A DNA stretch of 63,654 bases, filler included, from Octopus bimaculoides (lineage: Eukaryota), in the NCBI RefSeq assembly GCF_001194135.2. It is 6 parts of 5 records of this genome, joined end to end, with 100 filler letters (N's around TTAATTAATTAA, not from the genome) between each part and the next. Parts side by side here need not be neighbours in the genome. Positions count along the whole stretch, not along the records: positions 1 to 17,963 come from NC_068981.1; 5 more parts are not named here. One strand, 5' to 3'. Positions 1,079 through 17,963 of the stretch are shown piece after piece. Position 1 is the stretch's first letter. Every line of letters begins with the position of its first letter. The notes below the pieces were generated by a model. The model did not search any database. It saw only the letters and a list, made by a program, of their open reading frames with translations, and had not been told where the DNA came from. Both the position numbers and the translations under genes were made by a program.

Positions 1079-1124
1079 TGGGCCACACAAATAAGATCAG
1101 GCAGGACAGAAACAAAAACTAAAA

Positions 1125-1172
1125 AGAGCAAATAGATACAGTGTATTTTAATACACTGTATCTATTTGCTCT
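1125..1172. repeat. Perfect 23-bp inverted repeat with a 2-nt loop
   Basis: AGAGCAAATAGATACAGTGTATT (1125-1147), TT, AATACACTGTATCTATTTGCTCT (1150-1172). Confidence 0.95.
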
Positions 1173-1773
1173 CTTTGGAGAGACTATCAATCAGGTAGAA
1201 ATGAAATTTATATGCAATGTTTAGTTTTTCAGAAATAAATGGTAAAAATTAACTGGAGAAAATGAAGCAATAATTTCTGAAGTTTACAATAAAGATTTAG
1301 CTTATGATGTAATAAAATACAAAATATAATAGTAACACCATCCCCACTTGTCCCTCTTCATCTCCTGCCACTTAACCATTTAAGACTGTGCCGCCTTATA
1401 TTTTCAAAATACTAACTTATGGTAATGACTTTCCTCATGCTATCTCATAATAATAGTAACTGTCACTCATGAGTATGATTTGATAGCATGAAACATGTAT
1501 TCACCAACTGTATTATGTGGCTATGTAGTTTCAAGAAGACACAGACACCCTCTCAAACCTCCTACTCTGGATCCAATGCAACAGTAAGGATGTGATAGCT
1601 GGGAGGAGAAAGGACTGCACTAGCACTCTGCTGGTAATCATTTCCAGCCAAGCTGGAGCAATGAGAAATGAAGTGCCTTTTCTAGCACTCAAACCCCAAA
1701 CCACATGATCATGGGCCAAATACTTTAATCAGTAAGTTACACACCTTCACATTACAAAAGCATCTATTAAACT

Positions 1774-1996
1774 TTACCCTTTAGCATTTAAACCGATCAT
1801 ATCCAGTCAAAATAGTCTACTTGTTTTATGTTCAAATTAGCCTGATCCAGCCTCTTACAGCTACTCTACAATGTCATTCTAGAACTAAAACACATCATTG
1901 AAAATCAAAGCTTTGTGACAATGCATGATTAATTCAAGACAATGTGAAGAAATAAGCATTACATGTGATAGAGTAATCTGAATGCAAAAGGGTTAA
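1774..1996 (+). mobile_element. piggyBac-like MITE, family P1
   Basis: TTACCCTTTAGCATTT ... AATGCAAAAGGG|TTAA termini; body matches 864-1078. Confidence 0.75.
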
Positions 1997-2889
1997 GGTC
2001 TTATTTCATATTTCATGATTCTTCATGCCTTAATGACAAGTCAGAACATCATCACCATTTTAACATCCACTTTTCCATGCTTTCATTTTACCTAATTTAT
2101 CTTCAGACAGAATTCACTGAGGTAGATTTTCTATGGTTGAAAACACTTCTTGTTGCCACCGCTAATTTGTTTCTAAGCAAGGTAATATTTCCCCATGATT
2201 GGACATGTTTCCATAGAAGATTGGAAAATGATCTACTCAAGTGACAGTAACACTTGTCTAGAACAATCATGCAATGCCTTGATAAGGAGGTTACAAATGT
2301 ATCAACATTTAACATCCATCCTCCAAACTAGCATGGACTGAATAGTTTGACGGGATCCAACAAGCCCAAGGATTGCATCATGCTTCAATATCTGCTTTAC
2401 GGCACATACTGAGTATTCTTTTCTTTTTTTGTGGCACTGACAGGTGAGGTTACCATGCAACTCACAAGACTAAGATCCCCTTCAAATGAGTACAGTTATA
2501 ATAAGGAGGGGTTAAAATACAAGAAAAGGGAACAGAAAAGAAAAGTTTCCCAAAATGCATGAGTGATTCTCAACCAGGGTCCTATAAGATTTTTGGGGAT
2601 CTACACTAGCAAAATAGTAAACTGGGAATCTACAATAGTATATTGCTTCACTGTCATCAATACCACAAAAAGCAACTTTCACAAAAGAATGAGAATGACA
2701 CTACAATAGATTTCCTGAAGGATTCTAATACAAATTATCATCTTAATGTTCCTGGTTACTAAGATTCCCTATACATTTAGATTTCAAGAGTAATGTAAAC
2801 GCATGTTTCCCACTGAAATACAAGCGTTTGAAGCTGACAAAAATGTGAAGGAAAAAAAGAAGACTTCTTATGCATGAAGCTCAATAAAT

Positions 2890-3290
2890 ATAAACAGCAT
2901 CCATGTGGTCGCTCGAACGTCTAAAAGAAGCAGATGAATCCCGCTCAGAATTACACCCTACAATCTTGAAAGCGAAGGGACGCATTGGATAATGCAGTCC
3001 TAAATTTACAATGATATACAATGCCAGAGGAAGCAGGATAGTTATAGGTGTACTTGTTCGTTTAGAACTGACCAGCGGTTAAGCAACACTCTGCCCACAA
3101 TCCAACTAGGGCGCCTCTACGTTGTCATTCGACTTGTTACGCTACAAAAGGCAAACAAACGTCTTTTAAATCTAACCCTACCAGAGTAGACAATGTACCT
3201 TGATACTCAAAAGAACGGTTGTGTTCACAGCTGAAACATCTTTTCACCATACGTCCGTGCCATCAGGGCTGACATAAAACAAACCATGAA
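2890..3290. repeat. Unclassified dispersed repeat (related copy at about 26510-26640)
   Basis: Shared blocks ACACCCTACAATCTT / GGATAATGCAGTCCTAAA versus ACACTAGCATCTT / GGATGGTGTAGTCCTAAA. Confidence 0.45.
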
Positions 3291-3592
3291 CTTGGCCATT
3301 CTTAAAAGTTATATTAAGTTGTTTACTGGAAACAGAGCCTCGTGAAAACGAAACGAATTGTCATGGTCTGCTTTCATAATGGAAAGTGACACTCAATGAA
3401 ATATTGGCGGGGGTATGCATTTGTGGCATGACACGGGAAAAGAGTGGGGCAGCCCAAAAGATCTATAGCAGCAGAAAAAAATAAGTTGCAGATCACTTAA
3501 GCCTGCACTAAAATTAGCGGGCGTTAAACCGATATCTACAAGCAGCATGGTTACAGAAATGCGGTTAAACCCAATAGATATACATGAAAAAT

Positions 3593-3607
3593 AATAAAAT
3601 TGCAATG

Positions 3608-3642
<35 letters not shown>
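3593..3642 (+). other. AATAAA followed 9 nt later by a 35-nt poly(A) tract (possible retroposed 3' end)
   Basis: AATAAA at 3593-3598, pure A tract at 3608-3642. No convincing TSD found. Confidence 0.45.
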
Positions 3643-3644
<2 letters not shown>

Positions 3645-5319
3645 AACTGACTTAGCTTCAAATTATGAGAGGAACGGGTACTTAAAGGTTTGAAATGTTT
3701 TCAGTGGACAATTAAATTTTTTTTTTTTTTTAATTCTAAATAATCTGTTGTCATTGATTGCTTATATTTTAGAAGTTGTCTATATAATAAAAAAAAAATT
3801 GCTAAATCAAAATTCGAACTTACTAATTAATGTTATTATTGATTGAAACATTTATTGTCCTGAATGAAATTTGAAAATAGACAAAAGAGAAAGAGCAAAG
3901 ATTGATCAGTGCAGTTTACAGCACAACCGAACAGAGAAATGTCATCGAGCTGACTGGACAAGTAATTCGAATGGGTGTATGAAAATACTTTGTTAAACTT
4001 GATCAATGATCAAACAAAAAAATCATACATGTTCAAATAATATTTTATATATATATATATGAATACAATCATTAAGATAAGCACTTTTCAAATAGCTTTT
4101 TCGGTTTTGTGTTAGTGTTTCTATAGTATTCTTTTTTTTTTTAGGGGCTGTAATTAACCGGCTTATTTTGTATTCGTGATTTCTAGATAATTAAATTTAG
4201 ATTTCTTTTTATTTTAAACATACAGCCCGCCTATTCGAAAATGGTTATGAAGTCTGGCTCAAAAGCTATTTAAAAAAAACACTTAGGAGACACGTGCTAC
4301 ATTGCACAAGATCGGAGAAAAACCGACACAATTGTTGTATAAATTCGTGACAGCAGAACATACTGACACAAACGCACTCTATACATATACATTCATATAT
4401 ATTTAAAAACGAAAACTACAAATAACTTCATTTGTTTCATTTTTAAAAAATTGTCTAAAATGAAACAAATCCGCTATTTGTACAAAGTCTCCCATATATA
4501 TATATATTGAACAGTGTATTCAACACCTGCGATAAGAAACGACTTTACCCAGGAAAAACACACCGGTCGGTATAAAGAGGGCATATAATTCACCGATTTC
4601 CGACAAGCTTCAACTACAACATTTTTTCAGAGTTTTCTTCAATTTTGAACATCTTATGGCCTAAGTATATATGTACGATATATAAACAATGTCGTAAAAT
4701 ATTTAAAGCTTATTATTTATTATTAATATTGCAAGAACCACTAGAAATATAATTTTTTTTTTACGTGTATTTTTCGTAGGTGTCTATGTTAATAGAAATA
4801 TATATATATATATTAAAAAAGACAAATAGTTAATCGATGAAATATTTATGTAAATGTGTTGTTTTTTTTTGTGTGTGTGTGTGTGTGTGTTTGCTTCACA
4901 AAGTAATAAAACATTTGGCTTCAACGACATTGAGAAAGAAATAGAGAAATATCCATAATAGTAACATATAAATGTAGGAAGACAAAAGAGCTAATACAGT
5001 TTCTTCCAAGTAAAGCCTGCTTTCATAATCTTAACGAACATTGACGCCAAGAGAGAGGACGAAGGAGGGAGAGACGGAAACACCGGGTGTTATAAAGGAT
5101 CAAACAAACAAGCAAAAACAGCCACATTTCTCGCAAGTGATATTAATAACTTGTATTGTTTAAGGCTTAGAAAAGGAGGGTTTTTAAACAATACATCATT
5201 ACGTAAGAGAAATTCAAACATTCAAAATGGTTCGATATTATATATATTTTTTTATATATATACGATAGATAGATAGATATAAATGACTACAAAAAAAGGA
5301 AGTAACTCGTATAACTTAC

Positions 5320-5325
5320 CGCCAT
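5320..5325 (-). CDS. Putative first coding exon (Met-Ala) of an unidentified host gene transcribed leftwards; 5' UTR probably about 5400-5326
   Basis: Minus strand reads ...CCCCATA ATG GCG|GTAAGTTA: A at -3, G at +4, consensus donor at 5319-5314, in CpG-rich unique sequence. Downstream exons were not identified. Confidence 0.55.
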
Positions 5326-5329
5326 TATG

Positions 5330-5800
5330 GGGACGACTACAAATCTAGCGCCAGCTAGTGAATCAGGGGGAGACAACCGTAACACCGGATATGATAAGAA
5401 CTCTTCTTACATTTCCAAACACACAGAATGAGATTCATTAATTCCTTTTTTTTTTTTTTGTGAAACCCGATGTGTATTTTACGTAATTGTTTAGTTTATA
5501 TTTTAAAGATAGTTATAGATTTCTCTGTGTAGATGGTTGTATGTTGTTTATTATTTACCTTTTCAATTAAAAAAAAATATGTATTAGAAAGAGAGTTGTA
5601 ATGTCCAATGTCATAAAAGTGTTAGTCAAACGAATTAGCTTCGCATGAGCTTTAAAACGAGTTGCCGCCTTGACTTCCCCGGAAGTTTACGTCTCGGTGT
5701 ACGGTGTTCACATAAGAAATATGCAGTGTTAAGAACGACTCGGGTATTAAAAATGGGTAAAATACCGGCGTAATTAGCTATGTTTTCAATCATTCTCAGT
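5330..5800. promoter_or_regulatory. CpG-rich candidate (bidirectional) promoter with a palindromic double ETS/GABP-type site
   Basis: ACTTCCCCGGAAGT at 5673-5686 (two inverted GGAAGT cores). High CpG content. A plus-strand AAAATGG|GTAAAA at 5753-5758 could be a divergent first exon. Confidence 0.5.
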
Positions 5801-6719
5801 TCGGTAAAACAATTAACAGGATATAGCGCTTTCTTTTGTAGAATAGGTTCATCCATTACTTCTACTTGACAACATATTCAAAAACAAAGCAAGTTTTGTG
5901 AGAATATGAAAAGAATATAATACGTTAATTGTTGTATTTGGGGACGGTAATGTTGCCAGTTTAGCCAATAAAAACACGCAGTGTATATTTGGTGTTAATT
6001 TGCTTCAGCTTTATATTACATTATGTTATATTTTAGATGTAAAACACCAAGCGCAAGTAAACCCTGCTATTGTGAAATAAAGAGGTTCCCGACATATTTC
6101 ACCATAAGTATGCTAGTTTAAAGAAGTTAAACGGCTCCCTCCCTTTCAACATATATTTGTTTGTGTTCTGTTAAGTTAACATTAGTAATAAGTGATTTCT
6201 CATATTTTACAATGGATTGTTTTTGTTTCTTTTTCTACTGTGACAATGTTTATGAAGAATAGGTGTAACATTAGCAGAAAAATAGATTTGCTGCATTTCT
6301 CAGTGGAATGGTTTTCTCCTAGTTACCCTTTCATTATAGTCATTTCTTACGATTGACAGTTACAACATTACCGTACTGGGTCTCAGAATTTGCTTTTGTC
6401 AACTCTTTAACAATAATATGTTAATTCATTTCCAGATTTCTCTTACTCTAATTAGGCTTCTTGGCGTTACAGAACTTAACTATAATTAATTTTCATTAGA
6501 TCAGTGATTCCTAACGTGGAACCTGGGAAAATTGTGGTAGGGCATGGGATCCATTTTTTTTTTCTTTTTAGTGGGATATGGAATTGTAAAAAAAATTTTC
6601 ACAGCAAACATACACTTATACTCTGCCTAGCCAAACCAATCCCTCCAGCCAAGCATATTGTGTGAAGATTGTTTGTTACAGTATAGCGTGATTCAAATGC
6701 CCTAATGTGGATATTCATT

Positions 6720-8754
6720 TATAGGAAAGATGGTTAGACATCATTAGATGTATACCTGACTTTCCTATATAATATTAAGAATTAACGGAACGCTGAACTC
6801 CAGACTATCAACACAAACAACATTTATTTAAGGTGGAATATATATACATCTTTAGCTCTTGTTTGTTGTTACAGCTTCTGTGTGTGTGAGCATGGTTGTT
6901 GGTATGTAGATGTAAGCGAGCTGTCGAGCGGAAGTTCGAAAGATGGAGAGAGACAGCTAAACACGTCCTTGCTCAATCGCTGGCCAGCAAGAAAGAGACA
7001 GAATGAAGCGGGAAAGCTTGGTTGTTGAATTCCACGCATGCGTGAGACTACGCATGCGCACAGCGTTACTACAGGGCTCCCTTGCCAGTGCGGAACGCAC
7101 GATAATATAAAATAAAATTCTGTTGGNNNNNNNNNNNNNNNNNNNNNNNNNNNNNNNNNNNNNNNNNNNNNNNNNNNNNNNNNNNNNNNNNNNNNNNNNN
7201 NNNNNNNNNNNNNNNNNNNNNNNNNNNNNNNNNNNNNNNNNNNNNNNNNNNNNNNNNNNNNNNNNNNNNNNNNNNNNNNNNNNNNNNNNNNNNNNNNNNN
7301 NNNNNNNNNNNNNNNNNNNNNNNNNNNNNNNNNNNNNNNNNNNNNNACAAGATGTAGCACAAACACACACAAAGAAAAATGAAAGAAATGAATGTGCACT
7401 CGTGAGATACATGCATGCAATGTACAAATTGAAGGAATGAAAGAAAAACATGCAATATGGGCAGTAAATGCCACCTAGTAAAAAACAAATGAGACAATGA
7501 TTAAACAAATCGTGATGACTCCTGTCCAGGAACTGGAATCACGGAATGTGAAAGTCTGAGTGTTTGGTTTTACTGAAAGGAAAGAAAATGTATGAGTGCA
7601 CAAGTGTGTGTGTGAGAAAAAACACAGAACATATTAAAGTGTCTGTAGAGACAAAANNNNNNNNNNNNNNNNNNNNNNNNNNNNNNNNNNNNNNNNNNNN
7701 NNNNNNNNNNNNNNNNNNNNNNNNNNNNNNNNNNNNNNNNNNNNNNNNNNNNNNNNNNNNNNNNNNNNNNNNNNNNNNNNNNNNNNNNNNNNNNNNNNNN
7801 NNNNNNNNNNNNNNNNNNNNNNNNNNNNNNNNNNNNNNNNNNNNNNNNNNNNNNNNNNNNNNNNNNNNNNNNNNNNNNNNNNNNNNNNNNNNNNNNNNNN
7901 NNNNNNNNNNNNNNNNNNNNNNNNNNNNNNNNTGTATGTGAGAGAGTGAATGCGACATATAAGAACATAATAAAAGACTATATGTATGTGAGATATCACA
8001 GCAGATAGAAAGTCAGTACACGTGAGAGTTTTATACCAAGTTCTTGAGTACACAATTGAAAGTATCGCAGGCTGTAATTCTTGTCTGTTTATTATCGTGG
8101 TGAAGCTAAGTCACCTAACAGAATCGAAGAGAGAGATTTGCCGCGGTGGTTTAGTTTGGTGTACATAGTAAGTCGTGTTGACTATGGTTGGAGATGCTGG
8201 TGGTCATCGTTGCTTGGTAGTTCAGTCTCCATGGCCGCATTTGTTCTTTAGTCGGGTTCACCAGTTATAGGTTGGTAGTCCTGAATCCATGCTGCGTTTG
8301 TTTCACGTCGGGGTCACCACTTTATACGAAAGTGGGTTATACATCATTAGATGTATCCCTGACTTTCCTATATAAAATTAAGAATATAACGGAACGCTGA
8401 ACTCCAGACTATCAACACAAACAACATTTATTTAAGGTGGAATNNNNNNNNNNTATAACGGAACGCTGAACTCCAGACTATCAACACAAACAACATTTAT
8501 TTAAGGTGGAATATATATACATCTTTAGCTCTTGTTTGTTGTTACAGCTTCTGTGTGTGTGAGCATGGTTATTGGGACGTTGGTATGTAGATGTAAGCGA
8601 GCTGTCGAGCGGAAGTTCGAAAGATGGAGAGAGACAGCTAAACACGTCCTTGCTCAATCGCTGGCCAGCAAGAAAGAGACAGAATGAAGCGGGAAAGCTT
8701 GGTTGTTGAATTCCACGCATGCGTGAGACTACGCATGCGCACAGCGTTACTACA
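6720..8754 (-). mobile_element. Non-autonomous LTR retrotransposon (TRIM/LARD-like) with two LTRs and a tRNA-Trp PBS
   Basis: Near-identical direct repeats at 6720-7073 and 8323-8754 (the second is inflated by a 10-N gap overlap). Minus-strand LTR starts TGTAGT. PBS TGGTGACCCCGACGTGA (8319-8303) lies 3 nt inside the right LTR. Weak purine tract (AAGGGAG) precedes the left LTR. Imperfect TSD CATT/CCTT. No gag/pol ORF in the visible internal part. Confidence 0.85.
8303..8319 (-). other. Primer-binding site complementary to the tRNA-Trp 3' end
   Basis: Plus strand TCACGTCGGGGTCACCA equals the conserved 3' 17 nt of eukaryotic tRNA-Trp including CCA. Confidence 0.9.
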
Positions 8755-8929
8755 CCTTTAAGGAAAGTATATAATTATAAAATATTAAAAATAAAGTTTT
8801 TTCATATCACCTGTGGGGCATACATCTTTCTGAAAAGTTATAGTGGGGTCTGGGGTAAAATAGATTGGGAAACACTGCACTAGAACATCATCATTATCAT
8901 TTTCTATGTTAGCATGAGTTGGACAGTTT

Positions 8930-9720
8930 GAACGAACCCAATGAACCACGGCTACATTGTGTTCCATGTCAGATTTGTCATGGTTGCTACAGTTGGATGC
9001 CCTTCCTAATGCCAACCACTTTACAGAGTGTAGACGGTCTTTTTTTTTTATACCACCAGCTGAATCAAATTTCGTCAGGCCCCCTGACTTTCCTTGCTCC
9101 TGGAGTGGTTGTTCCTAAGCAACATACTGTTTCAATTTGAACAACAATAAGCCCTTGTAGCTTTGTACAAATGTAAGAAATAAATATTTAAACAAGCCAA
9201 CAAAAGAGCTTTCATACAGTTGCTCATCTCCTCAAGCACTAGACAACCAATCCCTACATCATCATCATCAACATTTAATGTCCATTTTCCATGTTGGCAT
9301 TGATTGGATGGCTTGACAAGAACTGGCAAGGCCAGAGACCACACCAGATTCCATAGTCTGTTTTGGTTTGATTTCTACAGCTGGATGCCCTTCCTAATGC
9401 TAATCCCTTTACAGAGTGTACTGGGTGCTTTTTATGTGGCCCATCATCAATAGCACCTTGGTTTTAAAATCTCAATTCTGTTGTCGTGGGTGGGTCTTCT
9501 CAAGTACAGCAATGCATCACATATCTTGGTCATCTGTGATCTCTTTCATAAGGGTCTGAATTTTGAGATTGACCTTCATACTTCATCCCATGTCTTCCTG
9601 GGTCTCCCTCTTCCACAACTTCCCTCCACTCTAAGTGATCGACACTTCTTTATGCAACTGTCCTCATCCATCCACATCACATGACCAAACCAGTGCAGTC
9701 TCCTTTCTTGCACACTGCAT
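8930..9720 (-). mobile_element. Cluster of decayed RTE-LINE 3'-end fragments
   Basis: CATCATCATC...TTTAATGTCCATTTTCCATG and CTACAGCTGGATGCCCTTCCTAA motifs, reverse complement of the 3' UTR at 16895-17127. Confidence 0.7.
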
Positions 9721-9789
9721 ACAATTCCTCTTATTCCCAGCTTCTCTCTCAATACACCAATGCTTTATTGCACATGCACAAAAGGAAGG

Positions 9790-11820
9790 AATACATACAT
9801 GTACTGCAGAAATTGATTCTCAAAGCAGTGTGCCCCAGAACAAAATTGTATACCATAACTGTAATGGCAACTGAAGTCACACAGAAATTTGGCCAGCTTC
9901 TTTCATGCAATACATCTTTTCAAGGAGGGTTGGCCAGAGGTTACTCAAGAACAATGAACCATTTTGAGTGCAAACCAATTGCTTAAAATATACATTACTA
10001 AGATATTGCTCTGGATCTTGTTGATGTCAACAAACTGGAGCAATATATCAGTGTATTACTTTTGGGTAACTTCAGCTTCTTCAATGTGGGATGACTTTTA
10101 GAAATGACATACTACCAACAAGCACAGGTGGAGTCTCTGCTCAATCTTATCAATGCTTTATTTATGGAGCAAATTGTGCTCCAATCAGCCAAGGCAAATA
10201 TACTGGACCTTTGCTTCACAAACACATTCATAATGTAAAAGTGACACCGGCACTAAACTTGTATCACAACATGAGAGAGCTGTCTATGTACAGACCAAAA
10301 GCACCTGCAGACATACAGTCAATATGAAGCACCCAAAATTTTTCCAGTCTGAACTGTCATAAGGCAAACTCAAAATTGATTGAAAAAGAGATCCTCAAAC
10401 AGGAGTGTCCTAAATATCTCTACACAAGACATTGACATTAAGCTCAAGCATTTCATGTCCATAATGCAAGCCATATGCAACAAATCTGTCCTAGAGCACA
10501 AGGTCAACACATGAAAGAATGAGATCCCTAGGAAGAGGAAAATTCTTATGAAATAATAGACAAAGATTGCAAACTGCCTAAACAAATATCTCAAAAGTAG
10601 TAAAAAATCCTGCCTCAAAACCATACTGTTGGAGATTAAGAAAATCTTGCAGCAATCCCATGAAAAAGAGAAAGCAGACAAGGAGGCCTGGATTATAAAA
10701 CATGAAGTCAAATCCTAAAGCTTTCTTTAACTTTGCCTAAGAAATGGTCAGTGCACTACAAGATAGGGCTCCTCTTCAAAAAGGATGGCTCCTTCACTGG
10801 AAGTCCAATAAGGATTACTGAAATACTGAATGAACAGTTCAAAAGTGTTTTCACAACCCTTTGGGACGCAGCAATACAGTAAGTGAGCAAAGCAGCAGAG
10901 TTCTTTGCCACTTCACCTATAACCAGGGTTATACATTGATTACATTGACATTAAAGAAGATGTAATACTGCTCATAGGTGAGGGAGACACAAATTCAGTG
11001 GCTGGCCCTGGATTCCTTGAAATCCTTCTCAAATCATGCAAACATACCCTTGCAAAACCACTGCAGCTTCTTTTTCATAGCTTTCTTGCAAGTGGTAAGC
11101 TCCCAGGCAAATTGAAGGAGGGAATGATATGCTCTATCCACAAAGGAGGAAGCAGAACAGATGTTAAAAATTATAGGCATATTTCTTTGACCTCACATAT
11201 CAGCAAAATCATGGAATGAATAGTCTGAAGGCAACTAGTTGTGTTCCTTGAAGAGAATGACTTACTGATTGACAACTTGCATGGTTATCAACCAGGTAGA
11301 AGCTGCCTGACACAGTTCTTACAGCACTACGACTGGGTGTTAAAGCAGCTGCTCGGTAACTCAAATATGGACATGATATATCTTAACTTAACAAAAGCCT
11401 TTAATAAGGCTGACCAGGGTATGAAATGTCACAAGCTGCATGATTTTGGCATAGTTAGAAAACTTGGAGAGTAACCAAATAACTTTTTGCAAAATAGAAG
11501 TCAGGCAGTAGTGACCAATGGAGTCACCTCCAAGGAAACACAATTAGTGAGTAGTATTCCACAGGGCACCATATTAAGGCCACAGCTACTTATATTGGTC
11601 CTCTCAGATATGCCCTGTGCTTTTAGCACACAAAGCTGAATGAAATGCCAACAGGATATACTGGCCCAGGAGAAACTGCAGTTCCTGAATCAAAATCAGT
11701 GCACAACCTGAGCATTGACGTAAGTAATGATGTGTACTTTCAGGTGCACATTACTAAGTTGGCAATAATGCAAAGAGTTAGCTGAATGGATCCTCCAAAA
11801 TTTCAGAACAAGAAACCATG
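9790..11820 (+). mobile_element. Degenerate CR1/Jockey-group LINE ORF2 (endonuclease to reverse transcriptase)
   Basis: RT motifs in broken frames: GPGFLEILLKSCKHTLAKPL...IHKGGSRTDVKNYRHISLTSHISKIME; LHGYQPGRSCLTQFL...IYLNLTKAFNKAD; SIPQGTIL (PQG at 11559-11567). Stops and frameshifts present. Confidence 0.9.
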
Positions 11821-11830
11821 ATATGTCCTG

Positions 11831-12031
11831 GTTAGGGTTCGGGTTTTAGAGTTAGGGTTAGGGTTTTAGGGTTAGGGCTCGGGTTTTAGAGTTAGGGTTC
11901 GGGTTTTAGAGTTAGGGTTAGGGTTTGGCAAAAATACTCATAGCCCTAACCCTAACCCTAACCCTAAAACCCTAACCCTAACCCTAACTCTAAAACCCAA
12001 ACCCTAACCCGAAAACCCTAAAGCTAAAACC
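11831..12031. repeat. Head-to-head interstitial telomere-like arrays: (TTAGGG-variant)n, 17-bp spacer, (CCCTAA-variant)n
   Basis: G-rich arm 11831-11926 with a 20-bp higher-order unit GTTAGGGTT(A/C)GGGTTTTAG(A/G). Spacer GGCAAAAATACTCATAG. C-rich arm 11944-12031 contains the reverse complement of the same unit. Confidence 0.95.
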
Positions 12032-12372
12032 AGTACAAATGCACGAACGGTGTCATAAATAACTGTACCGCCGATAGTTGTTGTTGACAAACAACAGCAC
12101 TAATTTTATTCAAGGGAAAAGATCACATTACACCGCTAGAATGTCTTGTTTACATTCCACAGCAGTAATTGTTTCCACCTCAATAGACGTCAGTGATTGG
12201 TTGAAATTACCGAAATATGACAACTTTTAACATGAAATAACTTCGAATATAAAAATTTTTCTTTGTTCTATAAGACAAAATATACAAGTATATGAAGTTT
12301 TAAAGTGTTTCGGTAGAAAACACACTAAATAAAACATAAATAAAAAGTGGCGCCCGCCAAATCAGAAGATCC
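12032..12372. mobile_element. Unclassified element attached to the CCCTAA arm (possibly Helentron/HINE-like)
   Basis: CpG-retaining block with a sharp end (GGCGCCCGCCAAATCAGAAGATCC) wedged between two decayed LINE fragments. Class is inference only. Confidence 0.4.
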
Positions 12373-13060
12373 AAATGTAGTCAATCTGGCTTGTGTTCCC
12401 ACCAATCTGATAGGTGAGCAGGTGACTGGATGGTTTCCTGAAGTTAGTATTGCAGATCATTAAGTCATGTGCATCACAGAATTCAAGTAGCCTTGTTCCC
12501 TCCTCATTGTGGGCAACAGCTCCATAAGCCCCAATGCACCATAGAGGCCACTTAGATGCTGCTCAGCATGTCCATTAAAGTCACCAGCCATAAAGATACG
12601 GTCACTGTCATTTGTCATCAAGGCAATCTGCAAAAGGATGCCATAAAATGAAGTTCTTGTTCTTTTGGTAGTAGTCCCTGCTGTGGAGTGAAGGCAGAAA
12701 TAATAGTTGCTGAATTACTTTGCAGAACTAGTCTAATCATAAGTATCCTAACACTCACTCTGACTACCTCAGTCACCTTATCCACCAATTTCTTAGCAAG
12801 AAGTATACCCACACCACCAACCACATCACTATTGCCAACCCAGAAGATTTTATACCTATGCTCTTTGTCTGTGAGGAACCTAGCAGAAGCTCCCCTTCAC
12901 CTTATTTCTTATGGGTTTCCATTCTAGCATCTCACCAGTTACACCAAACCTACCTTTCAATTTGCCTATACTGAGTGTGTCAACTCTAAGTGTGTAGAAG
13001 AGGTGGCAAGAGAGAACAGGGAGATGGGGATGAAAAGAGACCGGTTTGCATGGATGTTTG
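12373..13060 (-). mobile_element. Degenerate RTE LINE 5' part (AP endonuclease)
   Basis: TLRVDTLSIGKLKGRFGVTGEMLEW and VGGVGILLAKKLVDKVTEVVRVSVRILMIRLVLQSNSATIISAFTPQ, typical RTE APE motifs, with frameshifts. Confidence 0.88.
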
Positions 13061-13128
13061 TCAACAGGTATATCATAGTAGTTTGTCTCTGCATCTAATT
13101 TATCTTTATTCATTTGCTTCACACTTGT

Positions 13129-13316
13129 TGCATCTACCAGAAGAGTGTGTGGTATAAAACCACTGTTCATACTTCCTGCATCTACCAGAATAGTGTGTGG
13201 TATACAACCACTGTTCATACTTCCTGCATCTACCAGAATAGTGTGTGGTATAAAACCACTGTTCATACTTCCTGCATCTACCAGAATAGTGTGTGGTATA
13301 CAACCACTGTTCATAC
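13129..13316. repeat. 48-bp minisatellite, 3.9 copies, alternating variants
   Basis: Units start at 13129, 13177, 13225 and 13273 (TGCATCTACCAGAATAGTGTGTGGTATA(A/C)AACCACTGTTCATACTTCC). The variable site alternates A,C,A,C. Confidence 0.97.
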
Positions 13317-13408
13317 AAAGGCAAATAATACTGATTAATTCACTGGTAAGTATATGTGTCTTTTTATCTGATGCAAATGTTCTAGCAATGCTTGTATATA
13401 TGCTTTTA

Positions 13409-13535
13409 TGCATGTATGCATGTATGTATGTATGTATGTATGTATGTATGTATGCATGTATGCATGCATGTATGTGTGTGTCTGTCTGTTTGCATGTATG
13501 TATATATGTATGTATGCATGTGTGTGTGTGTGTAT
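13409..13535. repeat. Compound (TATG)n/(TG)n microsatellite
   Basis: Direct reading of the sequence. Confidence 0.95.
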
Positions 13536-14028
13536 GCCATTCTTGTTTGCATGTATTATAGGATTTTTATCTTCATGTTTCCAAGACATAGGTTGCAATT
13601 AACTACAAAAGGTATTGTGATCTGCTTGTATTTTATTTCATATTTTTCTTTTTCTGTCTGGAAAGAAGTTCCCATGACCACTTTAGAGGCTCTCTGGGAC
13701 CCATAGATGGGAGGGAATGGAATATTTTCAAACTAGAGATCTGGCTTGAATGCTTGTAACAGAGTGAATTCCACTAAAGGTAACTAAGGATCACGCATTA
13801 CACTGAGAGGTGGATTAGATATAACGGTCATGTAGGCCAAAGTAGAATTTGAAATCAGAATGCCAAGAGCCATAACAAATATCATGAGGCATCTTCACCA
13901 ACATTTCAGCTAGTGTGGCACCCTCAACCTTTTAGCATTCAGATTTCTTTGTCAAATGTATTGCTTATTTATTCGTATTGTTTTGAATTACTCATGCATT
14001 ATCTTGTAGCTTCAAGATTCTACTAGTA

Positions 14029-14305
14029 TACTCTTTTACTCTCTTTTACTTGTTTCAGTCATTTGATTGTGGCCATGCTGGAACACCGCCTTTAGTCGAG
14101 CAAATCGACCCCAAGACTTATTCTTTGTAAGCCTAGTACTTATCCTATCAACTTCTTTCAGTTTCCATCTACCAAATCCACTCACAAGGCTTTGGTCGGC
14201 CCGAGGCTATAGTAGAAGACACTTGCCCAAGGTGCCACGCAGTGGGAATGAACCCGGAACCATGTGGTTGGTAAGCAAGCTACTTACCACACAGCCACTC
14301 CTACG
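14029..14305 (-). mobile_element. tRNA-derived SINE family A, internally deleted
   Basis: Matches the family A copies at 23031, 23921, 31265 and 59325 but lacks the central CA/TA region. Confidence 0.9.
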
Positions 14306-14310
14306 TGTAT

Positions 14311-14412
14311 CATCATCATCGTTTAACGTCCGCTTTCCATGCTAGCATGGGTTGGACGACTTGACTGAGGACTGGTGAAACCGGATGGCAACACCAGGCT
14401 CCAATCTAAATT
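14311..14412 (-). mobile_element. 5'-truncated RTE 3' end with (GAT)n tail
   Basis: Near-identical to the reverse complement of about 17020-17120. GTGTAT direct repeat at 14305-14310 and 14413-14418. Confidence 0.85.
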
Positions 14413-15730
14413 GTGTATGTTTATATATTTTTAGAATGACATATTAGAATAGGTGTGAAAGGTTGGATCTGGCCAGTTTTAACATGAAACAGACAGTCTG
14501 TTTAGGCCTGACATGGCCAGGTTAAATGCTAAAGGTTTAAATTTAATTTACTGAACTTGGAAGGTTGAATGGAAGGTAATATTTACTTCAGTGAGATTTG
14601 AACTCAGAATACAAGGTACCAGAATAAATGCTACAAGGCATTTTTGCCCAATACCCCAATGACTCTGTCAATTTGCTTAACTTTGTGTTGCTCATTGATA
14701 ATCTAGCTGCTCTAGATCATGTTAACTTAGTCTTCCATATGCTGTAGATATCTGCAAGACCTGTCTTTTCTTAAAGTTCATCAATTTTCTATAACTTGAT
14801 GTTTTGTGCCATTGAGACTGTTATAAAGGAAGGAAGTTTGAGGAAATTTCATCAATAAAAAATTTTGATGAATGCCTCTCTAACACCAGATGTCAAGTGA
14901 CGGAAAAGTACTATATCTTACGGCTTAAAAGACACATGAGTACCCCATTTCAGAAGTGCATATTCAGGAAAAAAAAGTTTTAGTGCATTAAAGAATGTGA
15001 TATTTAAAGCAGTTTAGTAGTGTATTACAAAACTTTACAAAAGTACTTAGCTATAACAGAAATAATACTGTATATAAAAGTGAACAGTGCAGCTGAACAT
15101 AGAGTATAAAATTACAATAGTGAAAATATCCTACACTAGCTTAAAAGCCACATTCTGTGTGAACTTTTAAAGTAGCTCCTGCAGAGGGCTAAATGAATCT
15201 GTGGCCCAAAACTAAAGAGAGCAATAATAATAAAGTATTTCTTATCCTACCAATATGGTATAACCGTACCAATATGCTATTACTTTAAATTCATTTAAAA
15301 TGAAAAACTTGTAAGTTGACAAATTTTTGTAGTTCTTTAAAATTAGAATTTTCAAACTGTTAGCAGATAACAAATCCTCATCCAGATCTGATCCCAATGC
15401 TGGATGTTCAAGAACCAAATGAAGGGAAGATTTTCAATCCTAGGATCCTCCTGATTCCAAAAAGGTATAATATGTCTATGTTGAGCAAATGTAGACTGCG
15501 ATACAAGGGTCCCAGATGGATGGGCAGACCAAATTTTGCATTTATTATTATTGATGATTACAGCAATAAAACATGAACATGAAAGAACAAAGCAGGTTAC
15601 ATTTTATGAAAAACAAGACTGCGCTAAAGTTGGGCATAAATCAAAACACAGTTACAAAAGCTTTAATCATCTTCAAAGCCAGAAAAAATCCTTATCATCA
15701 AATCCTATAAATTTGTCATCAATATTGTTG

Positions 15731-17125
15731 CGGAGTCACTATCAGAACTAGAGGAGAAGTTTCAGGTGTGGAAGCAAGGTCTAGAATTGAAGGGCCTTAG
15801 AGTCAACCCAGCTAAAACCAAAATCCTAATAAGTAGGAAGGTAGATAAAACACAAACCCCTTCAGGTAGATGGCCCTGCTCAGTATGTAGAAAAGGAGTA
15901 GGTAGTAACTCTATAAGATGTACCCGGTGCAAGCTACGGACACATAAGAGGTGCAGCAACATCAAAGGCAGGTTAACTAGCAAGTTAGTTTTTGTTTGTG
16001 GCAGATGTTCAGGTGCAATAAAGACTGTAAACAAACAGGAAACAACTTCTATCTCATTCCAGGNNNNNNNNNNNNNNNNNNNNNNNNNNNNNNNNNNNNN
16101 NNNNNNNNNNNNNNNNNNNNNNNNNNNNNNNNNNNNNNNNNNNNNNNNNNNNNNNNNNNNNNNNNNNNNNNNNNNNNNNNNNNNNNNNNNNNNNNNNNNN
16201 NNNNNNNNNNNNNNNNNNNNNNNNNNNNNNNNNNNNNNNNNNNNNNNNNNNNNNNNNNNNNNNNNNNNNNNNNNNNNNNNNNNNNNNNNNNNNNNNNNNN
16301 NNNNNNNNNNNNNNNNNNNNNNNNNNNNNNNNNNNNNNNNNNNNNNNNNNNNNNNNNNNNNNNNNNNNNNNNNNNNNNNNNNNNNNNNNNNNNNNNNNNN
16401 NNNNNNNNNNNNNNNNNNNNNNNNNNNNNNNNNNNNNNNNNNNNNNNNNNNNNNNNNNNNNNNNNNNNNNNNNNNNNNNNNNNNNNNNNNNNNNNNNNNN
16501 NNNNNNNNNNNNNNNNNNNNNNNNNNNNNNNNNNNNNNNNNNNNNNNNNNNNNNNNNNNNNNNNNNNNNNNNNNNNNNNNNNNNNNNNNNNNNNNNNNNN
16601 NNNNNNNNNNNNNNNNNNNNNNNNNNNNNNNNNNNNNNNNNNNNNNNNNNNNNNNNNNNNNNNNNNNNNNNNNNNNNNNNNNNNNNNNNNNNNNNNNNNN
16701 NNNNNNNNNNNNNNNNNNNNNNNNNNNNNNNNNNNNNNNNNNNNNNNNNNNNNNNNNNNNNNNNNNNNNNNNNNNNNNNNNNNNNNNNNNNNNNNNNNNN
16801 NNNNNNNNNNNNNNNNNNNNNNNNNNNNNNNNNNNNNNNNNNNNNNNNNNNNNNNNNNNNNNNNNNNNNNNNNNNNNNNNNNNNNNNNNNNNNNGGCACA
16901 TAATAGACACCATTTCGAGCGTCGCCGTTTTCGTGCGGGTGACACGTAAAAGCACCCACTACACTCTCTGAGTGGTTGGCGTTAGGAAGGGCATCCAGCT
17001 GTAGAAACTCTGCCAAATTAGATTGGAGCCTGGTGTTGCCATCCGGTTTCACCAGTCCTCAGTCAAATCGTCCAACCCATGCTAGCATGGAAAGCGGATG
17101 TTAAACGATGATGATGATGATGATG
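15731..17125 (+). mobile_element. Young 5'-truncated RTE LINE (RT C-terminus with C4HC3 finger, 3' UTR, (GAT)n tail), interrupted by a gap
   Basis: Open frame ESLSELEEKFQVWKQGLELKGLRVNPAKTKIL...CSVC...CTRC...HKRC...CGRC. The 3' UTR ends AACGATGATGAT. Candidate TSD ATTGTTG at 15724-15730 and 17126-17132. Confidence 0.92.
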
Positions 17126-17304
17126 ATTGTTGGTATCACTGGGCTAAATTTGATAGTTTGTATCAAAGGAAAAGAAAACAGAATAACCCATCCAAAAATA
17201 AAAGTATTTTAAAAAGACAATATCAACTAGATTCTGCTAGGAGACACTATTGCTTCAGGATGGCTCCAGAACCTGGTGCATGCATTCCATACTGTATCCC
17301 CTTA

Positions 17305-17687
17305 GAAGATCTTTGAACACTTCTTTGATCTTGGCCACTAACTCAGCTTAGGTGTTGCAGGCAGAGCACAGTTGGTGTCTTTTTCAACTGCATTCCTCAC
17401 ATAGTTATCCATTGGAATTCAATCAAGGGAATTAGGGAGCCAGGTATTGGAGACTGAAGTTATAGAAATTCTCTGATAACCACTTCTGACTCTTTCTGGA
17501 AGTATGGCAAGTAGCTGAATTCTGCTGTCACACACATGGCCTTCCAGCAGCAGAACTATGCAGCTCATGTTTGACCACAAACCCCACCAGCTTCACATAG
17601 CCATCTGAATTGAGCCTAAGGCCCTATTCAAAGGTGTGGTGTGGAATGACATCACCCTCACTGGAGACACATCGAAAGACCATCACA
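17305..17687 (-). pseudogene. Tc1/mariner-superfamily transposase catalytic-domain remnant
   Basis: Minus-strand translation VMVFRCVSSEGDVIPHHTFE*GLRLNSDGYVKL...AAGRPCV*QQNSATCHTSRKSQKWLSENF, then after a frameshift WLPNSLD*IPMDNY. These are decayed QQDxAPCH and WPPNSPDLNP motifs. Confidence 0.85.
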
Positions 17688-17692
17688 GTTTG

Positions 17693-17957
17693 TGTTATAT
17701 GGACTGTTAGATATGTAATTCGTCTGACGTTCCGTGTGTCATGTGGTTCGTCTGAGTTCATTGTTTCATTGTTGTTGTCTTGTGGGACTGTCGTAGTAAA
17801 ATGTCATTGATATATATATGGCGGACATGACTTTTGTTTATTCATAACGAACATTGGGTGAGTGCGTTCTTTGTATGTAATTGAACAATAAATGTAATAA
17901 TTAAATTGTATAACTCGTTATGTTATCTCTGCGAGTCAGTCCGAGGGAAACATAACA
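17693..17957 (+). mobile_element. Solo LTR (265 bp)
   Basis: TGTTAT...ATAACA inverted termini, perfect 5-bp TSD GTTTG (17688-17692 and 17958-17962), internal AATAAA near 17886. Confidence 0.88.
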
Positions 17958-17963
17958 GTTTGG

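What the first reader, a model, noticed from the sequence alone, without database searches (positions are those of the whole stretch)
11831..12031. Head-to-head TTAGGG/CCCTAA arrays with fusion-like geometry and a 20-bp higher-order repeat
Seen: a G-rich arm pointing inward, a 17-bp spacer, then a C-rich arm, forming an imperfect inverted repeat of about 90 bp per arm. The left arm has a strict 6+6+8 period. Established: TTAGGG is the ancestral metazoan telomere repeat, and 5'-TTAGGG...CCCTAA-3' is the geometry of end-to-end fusions. However, the structure sits at the end of a decayed LINE and abuts a CpG-intact 340-bp block with a sharp end. Inference: more likely a mobile element carrying inverted telomere-mimic arms (G-quadruplex plus hairpin potential), which could recruit telomere proteins or seed breaks.
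Basis: partly seen in the sequence, partly recalled or inferred. Interest (0 to 1): 0.8.

Follow-up and report, generated by a model that had tools for sequence, protein, structure and literature searches.

The report
Head-to-head telomere-like repeat patch
Two short, degenerate telomere-type repeat arrays that face each other, plus 340 bp of unusually CpG-rich DNA, form a compositionally young patch between two broken old LINE fragments in an octopus-like genome; this looks most like a break-repair scar or a small repeat-tailed insert, not a chromosome-fusion point.

Summary
A G-strand array (11832-11928, strict 6+6+8 = 20-bp higher-order unit), a 15-17 bp spacer and a C-strand array (11944-12029) form an 86%-matched inverted repeat. 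It has strong hairpin potential and holds the only G-quadruplex motifs in the window.

The host is octopod-like. The left flank is a CR1/L2-like LINE reverse transcriptase on the + strand, cut inside the RT. Beyond the 341-bp block, the right flank is an RTE-like LINE endonuclease on the - strand, cut inside the EN. So the two old LINE fragments converge and both lack their 3' ends.

The block keeps its CpGs (o/e 1.18) and the arms keep four, while 4.2 kb of flanks have lost about 93% of theirs (o/e 0.07-0.08). The boundaries are sharp. The arms share variant units (TTCGGG/TTTGGG, TTTTAGRG) in the same phase, so they are copies of a pre-existing array type, not fresh telomerase product.

I found no target-site duplication, no flank continuity and no second copy in any reachable collection. 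The host genome itself could not be searched.

Best reading (about 0.4): a complex short interstitial telomeric sequence, that is, a patch at a break or rearrangement junction. A repeat-tailed mobile element remains possible (about 0.25). A fusion relic is unlikely (about 0.05).

The parts
10727..11831 (+). Left flank: decayed CR1/L2-like LINE ('LINE-A'), RT region, cut inside the RT thumb (...NFRTRNHDMSW). It is strongly CpG-depleted.
   Evidence: Pfam RVT_1, E = 5.8e-10, profile 1-142/205. 73.5% DNA identity over 10727-11343 to an RT-bearing contig, L001. RT homologues P0001-P0004. Stops and frameshifts. No continuation of this RT downstream. CpG o/e 0.07.
11821..11831 (+). Outer 11 nt, ATATGTCCTGG. 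It matches the reverse complement of 12030-12040 (ATTTGTACTGG) at 9/11. This may be an extension of the inverted repeat, or chance within the LINE-A reading frame (D M S W).
   Evidence: P about 1e-4 to 4e-4 for 9/11, but only 0.013 for the 7 nt outside the shared CTGG. The frame is read.
11832..11928 (+). G-strand telomere-like array: 4.8 copies of the 20-bp higher-order unit TTAGGG-TTCGGG-TTTTAGAG. It holds three CpG-bearing variant units and a G4 motif.
11929..11943 (.). Non-telomeric spacer CAAAAATACTCATAG, the loop of the hairpin. It is unique in the window and in the collections scanned.
11944..12029 (-). C-strand array on the + strand (G-strand on the - strand): 13 units. The inner part has a 26-bp period (3 x TTAGGG + TTTTAGGG). 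The outer part carries TTTTAGAG, TTTGGG and TTTTCGGG variants. It has a G4 motif on the - strand.
12030..12372 (.). Unique block: 33% GC, CpG-intact, contiguous with the C-arm. It has no ORF and no Rfam family, and only modest RNA structure. By eye it contains CCAAT, TGACGTC, TATAAAA and TTTGGCGGGCGCC motifs.
   Evidence: CpG o/e 1.18. Six-frame stops. RNA fold z about -2 on either strand. No Rfam match. No relatives. The motifs were read and are inference only.
12366..13000 (-). Right flank: decayed RTE-like LINE ('LINE-B') endonuclease fragment. It is cut at ...SQIDYIW(IF), which is profile position 92 of 117, so it lacks the end of the EN and the whole RT. It is CpG-depleted.
   Evidence: Pfam PF14529 Exo_endo_phos_2, E = 2.6e-5, 24.5 bits (below the 27.4 cut-off), profile 3-92/117. 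Frames read. CpG o/e 0.08.

Best explanation
This is a complex short interstitial telomeric sequence: a roughly 540-bp patch of comparatively young DNA at a break or rearrangement junction in an octopod-like genome.

Two old LINE copies that pointed towards each other both lost their 3' parts. The gap is now bridged by (i) a 97-bp telomere-like array, (ii) 15 nt of filler, and (iii) a second, homologous array in the opposite orientation, still attached to 341 bp of its own unique flank.

The arrays were not made fresh by telomerase at this site. They share a higher-order variant pattern, so they were copied or captured from pre-existing DNA of one array family, either subtelomere-type or repeat-tailed. 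They were joined tail-to-tail, probably by end joining with GG microhomology at the outer junctions.

What is shown: the anatomy, the two LINE truncations, the compositional island, the arm homology and the absence of a TSD. What is inferred: break repair as the process, and the source of the pieces. No function is implied. The hairpin and G4 potential would make the site a candidate fragile spot.
For: - Both flanks are internal LINE fragments on opposite strands, each missing its 3' end. The missing LINE-A part is not downstream. Ordinary nested insertion cannot produce this; a deletion or rearrangement is required, and the unit sits exactly on it.
- The unit has 15 CpG in 542 bp, against 12 in 4232 bp of flanks (Fisher p = 3e-8). 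The block has o/e 1.18 and the flanks 0.07-0.08, with TpG/CpA excess only in the flanks. So the unit is younger than the flanks or escaped their methylation.
- There is no TSD. The best flank similarities are at chance level (p = 0.4-0.7).
- The arms are 86% identical with unit-sized gaps, the same 6/8-6-8 phase from the outer junction, and shared TTCGGG/TTTGGG and TTTTAGRG variants. This points to a common source.
- Both outer junctions read CTGG followed by TT(TT)AG, giving 2 nt in register with the repeat.
- Precedent: short ITSs are inserted at double-strand-break sites with deletions, filler and 2-3 nt microhomology. Head-to-head stretches occur at 3 of 41 TERC-ITS loci and at a rearranged horse locus (PMC8537989; PMC7215372).
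Against: - Classical break-site ITSs are exact or nearly exact hexamers. Here only about half the units are canonical, and a 20-bp higher-order repeat is present.
- The origin of the 341-bp block is unknown.
- No empty orthologous site could be examined.
- CpG retention could reflect local hypomethylation rather than youth.
- The precedent is vertebrate only.
- A multi-copy element would produce the same local picture if its insertion was accompanied by a deletion.
Confidence: 0.4

Rival explanations
1. Mobile element. One version is a non-LTR retroposon (LINE 3' end or SINE) whose 3' UTR is the reverse complement of the block and whose tail is the telomere-like 20-bp repeat, present here as two 5'-truncated copies inserted tail-to-tail (the left copy being 11 nt + tail, the right copy 341 nt + tail). 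The other version is a foldback-type element with arms made of tandem repeats.
For: - The arms are homologous, including 9/11 of the non-telomeric bases outside them, and share the same repeat phase.
- The unequal outward extension looks like variable 5' truncation.
- The unit is compositionally young and sharply bounded.
- Arms built of higher-order tandem repeats around a short loop are the anatomy of foldback elements (my own knowledge).
Against: - There is no TSD for the whole unit, the palindrome alone or either half.
- The flanks are not contiguous, so an extra deletion or a coincidence is needed.
- The left 11 nt also fit the LINE-A reading frame.
- No further copy turned up in the window or in any collection searched, though the host genome was not among them.
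- I found no LINE or SINE with such a tail; the octopus RTE/SINE tails in this window are (GAT)n.
Confidence: 0.25
2. Local origin. An older interstitial telomeric array at this site evolved the 20-bp higher-order repeat by slippage. It was then duplicated in inverted orientation by fold-back or template switching during replication or repair, and the arms diverged afterwards.
For: - A short spacer between the arms is typical of fold-back inverted duplications (my own knowledge).
- The arms share variants and phase.
- One TTTGGG in the right arm sits where the left arm has TTCGGG, as expected from CpG decay.
Against: - The homology stops within 11 nt outside the arrays, although a fold-back duplication should also copy flanking DNA.
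- 14% arm divergence sits uneasily with four of about five repeat CpGs still intact in a region that lost 93% of its CpGs.
- It does not explain the block or the two LINE truncations.
Confidence: 0.1
3. Relic of an end-to-end fusion of two chromosomes. Each arm would be the proximal, variant-rich remnant of one telomere, and the block a subtelomeric sequence.
For: - The 5'-(TTAGGG)n-(CCCTAA)n-3' orientation is the fusion geometry, as at human 2q13 (PMC7215372; PMC6410037).
- The repeats are degenerate.
- The block lies where a subtelomere would be.
Against: - The arrays are tiny (15 and 13 units) and separated by non-telomeric filler.
- The left array abuts the middle of a LINE RT with no subtelomeric transition.
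- The block is CpG-intact and the arms keep four CpGs while the surrounding 4 kb is about 93% CpG-depleted. So the junction is younger than its flanks, whereas I am not aware of any recent octopod chromosome fusion.
- The window is ordinary interspersed-repeat DNA.
Confidence: 0.05
4. Assembly artefact: a chimeric join of two telomere-adjacent sequences in a short-read draft assembly.
For: - The piece is a gapped draft scaffold with four N runs and duplicated gap flanks.
- The joins lie next to repeated LINE families.
Against: - The region lies inside a 7.6-kb gap-free contig (8454-16063).
- The two arms differ from each other.
- The junction carries a unique 15-nt spacer that resembles no adapter I know. 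Graph ambiguity alone would not create it.
Confidence: 0.07
5. TERC-type ITS. The block would be a reverse-transcribed copy of the (unknown) cephalopod telomerase RNA from just 3' of its template, followed by repeat addition. Telomerase would also have acted on the other break end, as proposed for the Xenopus head-to-head TERC-ITS.
For: - The geometry [rc block]-(TTAGGG)n-(CCCTAA)n matches the Xenopus 'type C' locus (PMC8537989).
- The block length (about 310-340 nt) is in the range of mollusc telomerase RNAs (330-410 nt; PMC8480181).
- ACA triplets followed by an A-rich run lie near the block's far end.
Against: - The arrays are not telomerase-pure.
- There is no Rfam telomerase or H/ACA match, even at E <= 10.
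- Fold stability is only marginal (z = -1.9).
- The block is AT-rich.
- No cephalopod telomerase RNA is available for comparison.
Confidence: 0.04
6. Expressed hairpin locus. The block would act as a promoter driving transcription through the inverted arrays, giving a roughly 95-bp telomere-repeat dsRNA stem (a small-RNA precursor, or a TERRA-like transcript).
For: - The RNA hairpin is -131.8 kcal/mol, z = -12.8.
- CCAAT, CRE-like and E2F-like motifs lie in the block, and its CpGs are retained.
- There are sub-threshold Rfam hairpin matches.
Against: - The motifs were spotted by eye in AT-rich DNA with no statistics.
- The Rfam hits are structure-only, far below the gathering scores (58 vs 135, 52 vs 95), and occur on both strands.
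- There are no expression data.
Confidence: 0.03

Closest known systems
Short interstitial telomeric sequences inserted at double-strand-break repair sites, including complex head-to-head cases and TERC-ITS (vertebrates; PMC7215372, PMC8537989)
   Same: - Short internal arrays.
- Association with deletion of flanking DNA and with filler sequence.
- 2-nt microhomology in register at the junctions.
- Head-to-head stretches, documented at a minority of loci.
- A non-telomeric fragment adjacent to the arrays.
   Different: - Those arrays are exact or nearly exact hexamers attributed to telomerase. Here half the units are variants, organised in a 20-bp higher-order repeat shared by both arms.
- The adjacent block is not shown to derive from telomerase RNA.
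- The host is an invertebrate.
- No empty site was examined.
Fusion ITS (human 2q13 type)
   Same: Head-to-head 5'-(TTAGGG)n-(CCCTAA)n-3' orientation with degenerate units.
   Different: - About 30 units in total.
- A 15-nt non-telomeric spacer.
- LINE fragments rather than recognisable subtelomeres on the left side.
- The junction is compositionally younger than its flanks.
- There is no synteny evidence.
Foldback-type transposons (Drosophila FB, sea-urchin TU elements): long inverted arms built of short tandem repeats (my own knowledge)
   Same: - Inverted arms made of higher-order tandem repeats.
- A short loop.
- Strong hairpin potential.
   Different: - No TSD.
- No second copy seen.
- The arms are telomere-like.
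- The arm homology ends within 11 nt of the arrays, and only one side continues into the unique block.
Non-LTR retrotransposon or SINE 3' ends with tandem-repeat tails, and telomere-repeat-specific LINEs (TRAS/SART; PMC7265360 listed, not read)
   Same: - A unique 3' region followed by a short tandem-repeat tail.
- Variable 5' truncation.
- An association of LINEs with telomere-type repeats.
   Different: - No TSD.
- The tail-to-tail pair sits at a junction of two unrelated, older LINE fragments.
- The flanking LINEs are cut internally and are not the source of the tails.
- No family is known with this tail.
Subtelomeric degenerate telomere-like arrays
   Same: Variant-rich repeats next to a unique, non-depleted sequence.
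   Different: The location is internal, within ordinary interspersed repeats, and the arrays are inverted and very short.

Membership tests
Fusion ITS | Two telomere-repeat arrays in head-to-head (G-strand then C-strand) orientation | tested here: met
Fusion ITS | Each arm continues into the subtelomere of a different ancestral chromosome, with a synteny break at the site | not testable with these tools
   No cephalopod genomes are reachable. The left arm abuts the middle of a LINE RT, which does not look subtelomeric, but octopus subtelomeres are not characterised here.
Short ITS made by telomerase at a break | Exact or nearly exact (TTAGGG)n | tested here: not met
   7 of 15 units in the left arm and 8 of 13 in the right are canonical. 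A 20-bp higher-order repeat is shared by both arms.
Short ITS made by telomerase at a break | Microhomology to the repeat at the break end; deletion or filler at the site | tested here: met
   Both outer junctions read ...CTGG|TT(TT)AG. Both LINE flanks lack their 3' parts. There is a 15-nt spacer and a 341-bp block of other DNA.
Short ITS made by telomerase at a break | An orthologous empty site in relatives or other individuals | not testable with these tools
   Exact-ORF look-ups of four window ORFs found no other assembly of the locus.
TERC-ITS | The adjacent fragment is homologous to the species' telomerase RNA | not testable with these tools
   No cephalopod telomerase RNA appears in PMC8480181 or its supplement. 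Rfam gives no telomerase or H/ACA match at E <= 10.
DNA transposon / MITE / foldback element | Terminal inverted repeats | tested here: met
   Inverted repeat of 86% over 95 aligned nt, plus 9/11 outside the arrays.
DNA transposon / MITE / foldback element | A target-site duplication flanking the element | tested here: not met
   A systematic scan of boundary pairs gave only chance-level matches.
DNA transposon / MITE / foldback element | Multiple dispersed copies with the same ends | tested here: inconclusive
   No copies were found in the window, in viral, metagenome or prokaryote DNA scans, or in two protein universes. None of these holds the host genome.
Non-LTR retroposon (LINE 3' end / SINE) | A unique 3' region ending in a simple or tandem-repeat tail, with 5' truncation | tested here: inconclusive
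   The anatomy is compatible on the - strand (rc block + tail), and a second tail with 11 nt of matching pre-tail sequence exists. Those 11 nt also fit the LINE-A frame.
Non-LTR retroposon (LINE 3' end / SINE) | A TSD, and flanks that are contiguous once the insert is removed | tested here: not met
microRNA / hairpin RNA families (Rfam) | A score at or above the family gathering threshold | tested here: not met
   MIR8643 scores 58.3 against 135 and MIR8706 scores 52.1 against 95. The alignments show pairing only, on both strands.

The most novel reading that the evidence does not exclude
The 341-bp block is a retro-copied piece of the still unidentified cephalopod telomerase RNA, from just 3' of the template to its H/ACA end. 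It would have been laid down together with telomere-type repeats at a repaired break. That would make this the first invertebrate TERC-ITS and a direct sequence lead to the cephalopod telomerase RNA.
Probability: 0.04. Interest if true: 0.7.

Novelty: new member of a known kind. Interest (0 to 1): 0.3.

Why it matters
If the repair-scar reading holds, it extends to a cephalopod a phenomenon documented so far in vertebrates: telomere-type repeats left at repaired breaks, here in the rarer head-to-head form. It would also show that such patches can be built from pre-existing variant arrays rather than from fresh telomerase product.

If the block plus array instead proves to be multi-copy, it would define an octopus repeat family with a telomere-like higher-order tail. 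That would be worth knowing for repeat annotation and for interpreting interstitial telomere FISH signals.

Either way, the site combines a roughly 95-bp-stem hairpin with G4 motifs on both strands, and so is a plausible fragile or replication-stalling spot. None of this is established here, and the finding does not bear on karyotype evolution unless synteny data say so.

Tried and rejected
- **Other copies by DNA pattern.** The spacer plus C-arm start and a 26-mer of the block gave 0 hits in viral contigs and in 185,579 prokaryote genomes.
- **The higher-order unit TTAGGGYTCGGGTTTTAGRGTTAGGG.** It gave 0 viral hits and 4 metagenome contigs (L003-L006). These come from unrelated organisms: they share no other DNA with the window, and L003-L006 have 43-65% GC. 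The string therefore recurs in degenerate telomere arrays generally and is not diagnostic.
- **Other copies by protein.** Six-frame peptides of the block, and the peptide that spans the spacer, gave no hit at E <= 10 among 5.8e9 proteins and no hit at E <= 0.001 among 1.84e9 representatives.
- **The same locus in other assemblies.** Exact look-ups of four window ORFs found nothing on record.
- **Block as mitochondrial or coding DNA.** There are stops in all frames under codes 1 and 5.
- **Block as a structured RNA.** z is about -2 on either strand, and there is no Rfam family, telomerase RNA or hammerhead.
- **tRNA genes.** None.
- **TSD search.** Chance level only; a 16/19 direct similarity I noticed by eye has p = 0.73.
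- **One LINE-B copy on both sides of the unit.** This would have excluded a fusion. It was rejected: there is no RT on the - strand at 9440-10800. The fragment at 9257-9790(-) appears to be a separate 5'-truncated RTE-like 3' end; I read that from the translation and sequence by eye.
- **PBS-like TGGCGCCCGCC and promoter-like motifs in the block.** I noted them by eye and did not rely on them.
- **LINE-A endonuclease upstream.** Not confirmed by Pfam.
- **First LINE-B Pfam and PDB attempts.** These used a wrongly stitched frame and found nothing. The corrected stitch gave the EN match.
- **Literature string search for the variant units.** It returned only unrelated PCR primers.
Full report
**What is there**

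On the + strand a G-rich telomere-like array runs from 11832 to 11928. It consists of 4.8 copies of a 20-bp higher-order unit, TTAGGG-TTCGGG-TTTTAGAG. Tandem Repeats Finder gives period 20, 90% matches, no indels and score 164.

A non-telomeric spacer follows: CAAAAATACTCATAG, 11929-11943. Then comes a C-rich array at 11944-12029. Its 13 units, read on the - strand from the outer end inward, are TTTTAGCT, TTAGGG, TTTTCGGG, TTAGGG, TTTGGG, TTTTAGAG, 3 x TTAGGG, TTTTAGGG, 3 x TTAGGG.

The pattern TTAGGGTTAGGG with at most one mismatch occurs 16 times, all within this interval, against 0.06 expected from shuffles. The two arms form an inverted repeat of 78% ungapped and 86% (82/95) with one 14-nt and one 2-nt gap.

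As single-stranded DNA the region folds into one long hairpin of -70.5 kcal/mol (z = -11.5). As RNA it reaches -131.8 kcal/mol (z = -12.8). The only two G-quadruplex motifs in the 18-kb piece are the two arms, one on each strand.

**Host and neighbourhood**

The piece is a gapped draft scaffold with N runs at 7127-7346, 7657-7932, 8444-8453 and 16064-16894. It is full of interspersed repeats. An RTE-like ORF2 C-terminus with a PHD finger (15766-16063) is 72% identical to an Octopus bimaculoides UniRef protein. SINE/RTE-3'-end modules with (GAT)n tails are frequent. The host is therefore octopod-like, although a transposon protein match does not fix the species.

The left flank up to 11831 is a decayed CR1/L2-like LINE on the + strand ('LINE-A'). 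It matches Pfam RVT_1 with E = 5.8e-10, has RT homologues and is 73.5% identical in DNA to an RT-bearing contig. Its frame ends in ...NFRTRNHDMSW, inside the RT thumb region. The rest of this RT is nowhere downstream in the piece.

To the right of the C-arm lies a 341-bp block (12032-12372). Beyond it is a decayed RTE-like endonuclease on the - strand ('LINE-B'). It matches Pfam PF14529 with E = 2.6e-5 at 24.5 bits, just under the 27.4-bit cut-off, over profile positions 3-92 of 117. It stops at ...SQIDYIW(IF), so the end of the EN and the whole RT are missing.

The structure thus lies between two different, old LINE fragments that point towards each other, each lacking its 3' part. TPRT insertions are normally 5'-truncated (my own knowledge), so simple nested insertion cannot produce this arrangement. 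A deletion or rearrangement is needed, and the arrays plus block sit exactly on it.

**Composition**

The flanks 9208-11830 and 12373-13981 have CpG o/e of 0.07 and 0.08, with 12 CpG observed against 166 expected and a TpG/CpA excess of about 1.5. The block has o/e 1.18 with no TpG/CpA excess. The arms retain four CpGs inside TTCGGG, CTCGGG and TTTTCGGG units. CpG density in the 542-bp unit is ten-fold that of the flanks (Fisher p = 3e-8). The transitions are sharp: the last flank CpG is at 11719, the unit's CpGs run from 11840 to 12355, and the next is at 12599.

So the block is CpG-intact and the arms have kept four CpGs, where the flanks have lost nearly all of theirs. Arms and block together have either been at this site for much less time than the flanks or have escaped the methylation that eroded them.

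**Relation between the arms**

The arms are not merely both telomere-like. They share the same unusual variants: an 8-mer TTTTAGRG that punctuates pairs or triplets of hexamers, and TTCGGG or its deamination product TTTGGG at the second position. They keep the same 6/8-6-8 phase counted from the outer junction.

The 11 non-telomeric bases outside each array also match at 9/11: ATATGTCCTGG against ATTTGTACTGG. This has P of about 1e-4 to 4e-4, but only 0.013 once the shared CTGG is set aside. The left 11 nt also read as codons of LINE-A, so I treat this extension as suggestive only.

Shared variants in a unit that has kept its CpGs mean the arrays were not synthesised as pure TTAGGG by telomerase at this site and then decayed. 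They were copied from DNA that already had this pattern.

A search for the unit TTAGGG-YTCGGG-TTTTAGRG-TTAGGG found four metagenome contigs from clearly different organisms. The variant string itself therefore recurs in degenerate telomere arrays and is not a family signature.

**The block**

The block is 33% GC. It has stops in all frames under the standard and invertebrate-mitochondrial codes, no tRNA and no Rfam family, including telomerase RNA, H/ACA and hammerhead models, even at E <= 10. Fold stability is marginal, with z of -1.9 and -2.1. It has no repeat elsewhere in the window or in the fetched loci.

By eye it contains CCAAT, TGACGTC, TATAAAA, a TTTGGCGGGCGCC motif and a PBS-like TGGCGCCCGCC. 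I give these no weight without statistics.

**Tests of the mobile-element idea**

A scan of all plausible boundary pairs found no target-site duplication. This covered the whole unit, the palindrome alone and each half. The best similarities are at chance level, p = 0.4-0.7. The flanks are not two halves of one sequence.

The substitutes were all negative:
- DNA pattern scans of viral, metagenome and prokaryote collections.
- Block and spacer peptides against 5.8e9 proteins and 1.84e9 representatives.
- Exact look-ups of four window ORFs.

These negatives are weak evidence. I also tried to show that one LINE-B copy lies on both sides of the unit, which would have excluded a fusion. It does not: the - strand at 9440-10800 carries no RT. 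The fragment at 9257-9790, read by eye from its translation and sequence, looks like a separate 5'-truncated RTE-like 3' end.

**What it most likely is**

The literature held here describes three relevant kinds:
- Fusion ITSs, which are head-to-head (human 2q13).
- Subtelomeric degenerate ITSs.
- Short ITSs inserted during double-strand-break repair.

The third kind often comes with deletion of flanking DNA, random filler and 2-3 nt of microhomology in register with the repeat. Head-to-head stretches occur at a rearranged horse locus and at 3 of 41 TERC-ITS loci (PMC7215372, PMC8537989).

The present locus shares several features of that third kind:
- An internal position.
- Two truncated flanks.
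- Filler DNA.
- A GG in register at both outer junctions (...CTGG|TTAGGG and ...CTGG|TTTTAG).
- The head-to-head form.

It differs in that its arrays are variant-rich copies of a pre-existing array type and one of them brings 341 bp of foreign flank.

I therefore commit, at about 0.4, to this reading: a young patch at a break or rearrangement junction. It was assembled from two pieces of one telomere-like array family joined tail-to-tail across 15 nt of filler. The anatomy, truncations, composition and arm homology are shown. The repair process and the source of the pieces are inferred.

**Rivals**

- **Multi-copy element, about 0.25.** This would be a retroposon whose 3' UTR is the reverse complement of the block and whose tail is the 20-bp repeat, present as two 5'-truncated tail-to-tail copies, or a foldback-type element. 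It explains the arm homology, the asymmetry and the youth of the unit. It needs an extra deletion or a coincidence to explain the flanks, and it lacks a TSD.
- **In-situ inverted duplication of an older array, about 0.1.** It fails to explain the block, and why homology stops at the array ends.
- **Fusion relic, about 0.05.** It fits only the orientation. The arrays are tiny, are separated by filler and abut the middle of a LINE, and the unit looks younger than flanks that have lost 93% of their CpGs.
- **Assembly artefact, about 0.07.** It is disfavoured by the unique spacer and the non-identical arms inside a 7.6-kb gap-free contig.
- **TERC-ITS, about 0.04.** The block would be retro-copied cephalopod telomerase RNA. 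Geometry and size match the Xenopus case and mollusc telomerase RNAs, but nothing else supports it.
- **Promoter-driven hairpin RNA locus, about 0.03.** This rests on motifs seen by eye and on sub-threshold, structure-only Rfam matches.

**Novelty and verdict**

This is a real, well-delimited and somewhat unusual interstitial telomere-like structure. It belongs to a known kind (complex short ITS), here seen in a cephalopod. Its twist is a shared higher-order variant pattern and an attached CpG-intact block.

It is not evidence for a chromosome fusion, and it is not yet evidence for a telomere-mimic transposon. One BLAST of the block and junctions against a complete octopus assembly, plus a look at the orthologous site in a second species, would settle the matter. 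Interest is 0.3.

Noticed in passing
window 1-17963 (domains 2729-9207 vs 1-2728 and 9208-17732): CpG o/e is bimodal along the piece. It is about 0.7-1.5 across 2729-9207 and mostly <= 0.3 elsewhere. This suggests a boundary between germline-unmethylated and methylated domains, or between sequences of very different age.
   Followed up: partly
window 6781-7073 vs 8385-8754, next to N runs 7127-7346, 7657-7932, 8444-8453: Direct duplicates of 97-100% identity flank the assembly gaps. This looks like assembly redundancy (haplotype or gap-closing duplication) rather than biology.
   Followed up: no
window 13118-13316 and 13388-13536: A 48-bp minisatellite (4.1 copies, 95% matches) is followed by a (TATG)n/(ATGCATGTATGT)n microsatellite, just beyond the 5' end of the LINE-B fragment.
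   Followed up: no
window ~8890-9060, 9257-9450, 14309-14413, 16950-17127: There are several copies of an octopus SINE / RTE-3'-end-like module ending in (GAT)n or (ATC)n. The stretches 14309-14413 and 17014-17118 are 97% complementary, i.e. young copies in opposite orientation.
   Followed up: partly
window 9257-9790 (- strand): A 5'-truncated RTE-like LINE 3' end: ORF2 C-terminus ...REKLGI...RLHWFGHV...GRGRPRKTW, followed by the SINE-like module and a (GAT)n tail. It is separate from the LINE-B endonuclease fragment. I read this from the translation and sequence by eye; Pfam found no RT on that strand.
   Followed up: yes
window 15766-16063 (+ strand): An intact-looking RTE-like ORF2 C-terminus with a PHD-type zinc finger (Pfam PF00628, E = 1.3e-5) runs into the 831-N gap. 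It is 72% identical to an Octopus bimaculoides UniRef protein.
   Followed up: partly
window 1121-1176: A 27-nt near-perfect palindrome with a 2-nt loop. It gives a sub-threshold Rfam match to mir-46/mir-281 (34 bits against the 44.7 gathering score), equal on both strands, so it is probably a generic hairpin.
   Followed up: no
window 863-1080, 1766-1998 (direct) and 13922-14547 (inverted): An unclassified dispersed repeat of about 220 bp or more is present three times at 74-85% identity.
   Followed up: no
window 3608-3642 and 3717-3731: A35 and T15 runs lie 74 nt apart and form a weak inverted repeat. They may be two poly(A) tails of retroposons in opposite orientation.
   Followed up: no
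L006:3789-4053; L005:35-1240; L003:6160-6700; L004:370-600: These metagenome contigs from unrelated eukaryotes carry the same TTAGGG-TTCGGG-TTTTAGGG string. In L006 the short array sits in the loop of a 43-nt inverted repeat. L005 (65% GC) has four short arrays in both orientations within 1.5 kb. L003 has a long array with regularly interspersed CCCTAAAA. L004's array ends in a short inverted piece.
   Followed up: partly
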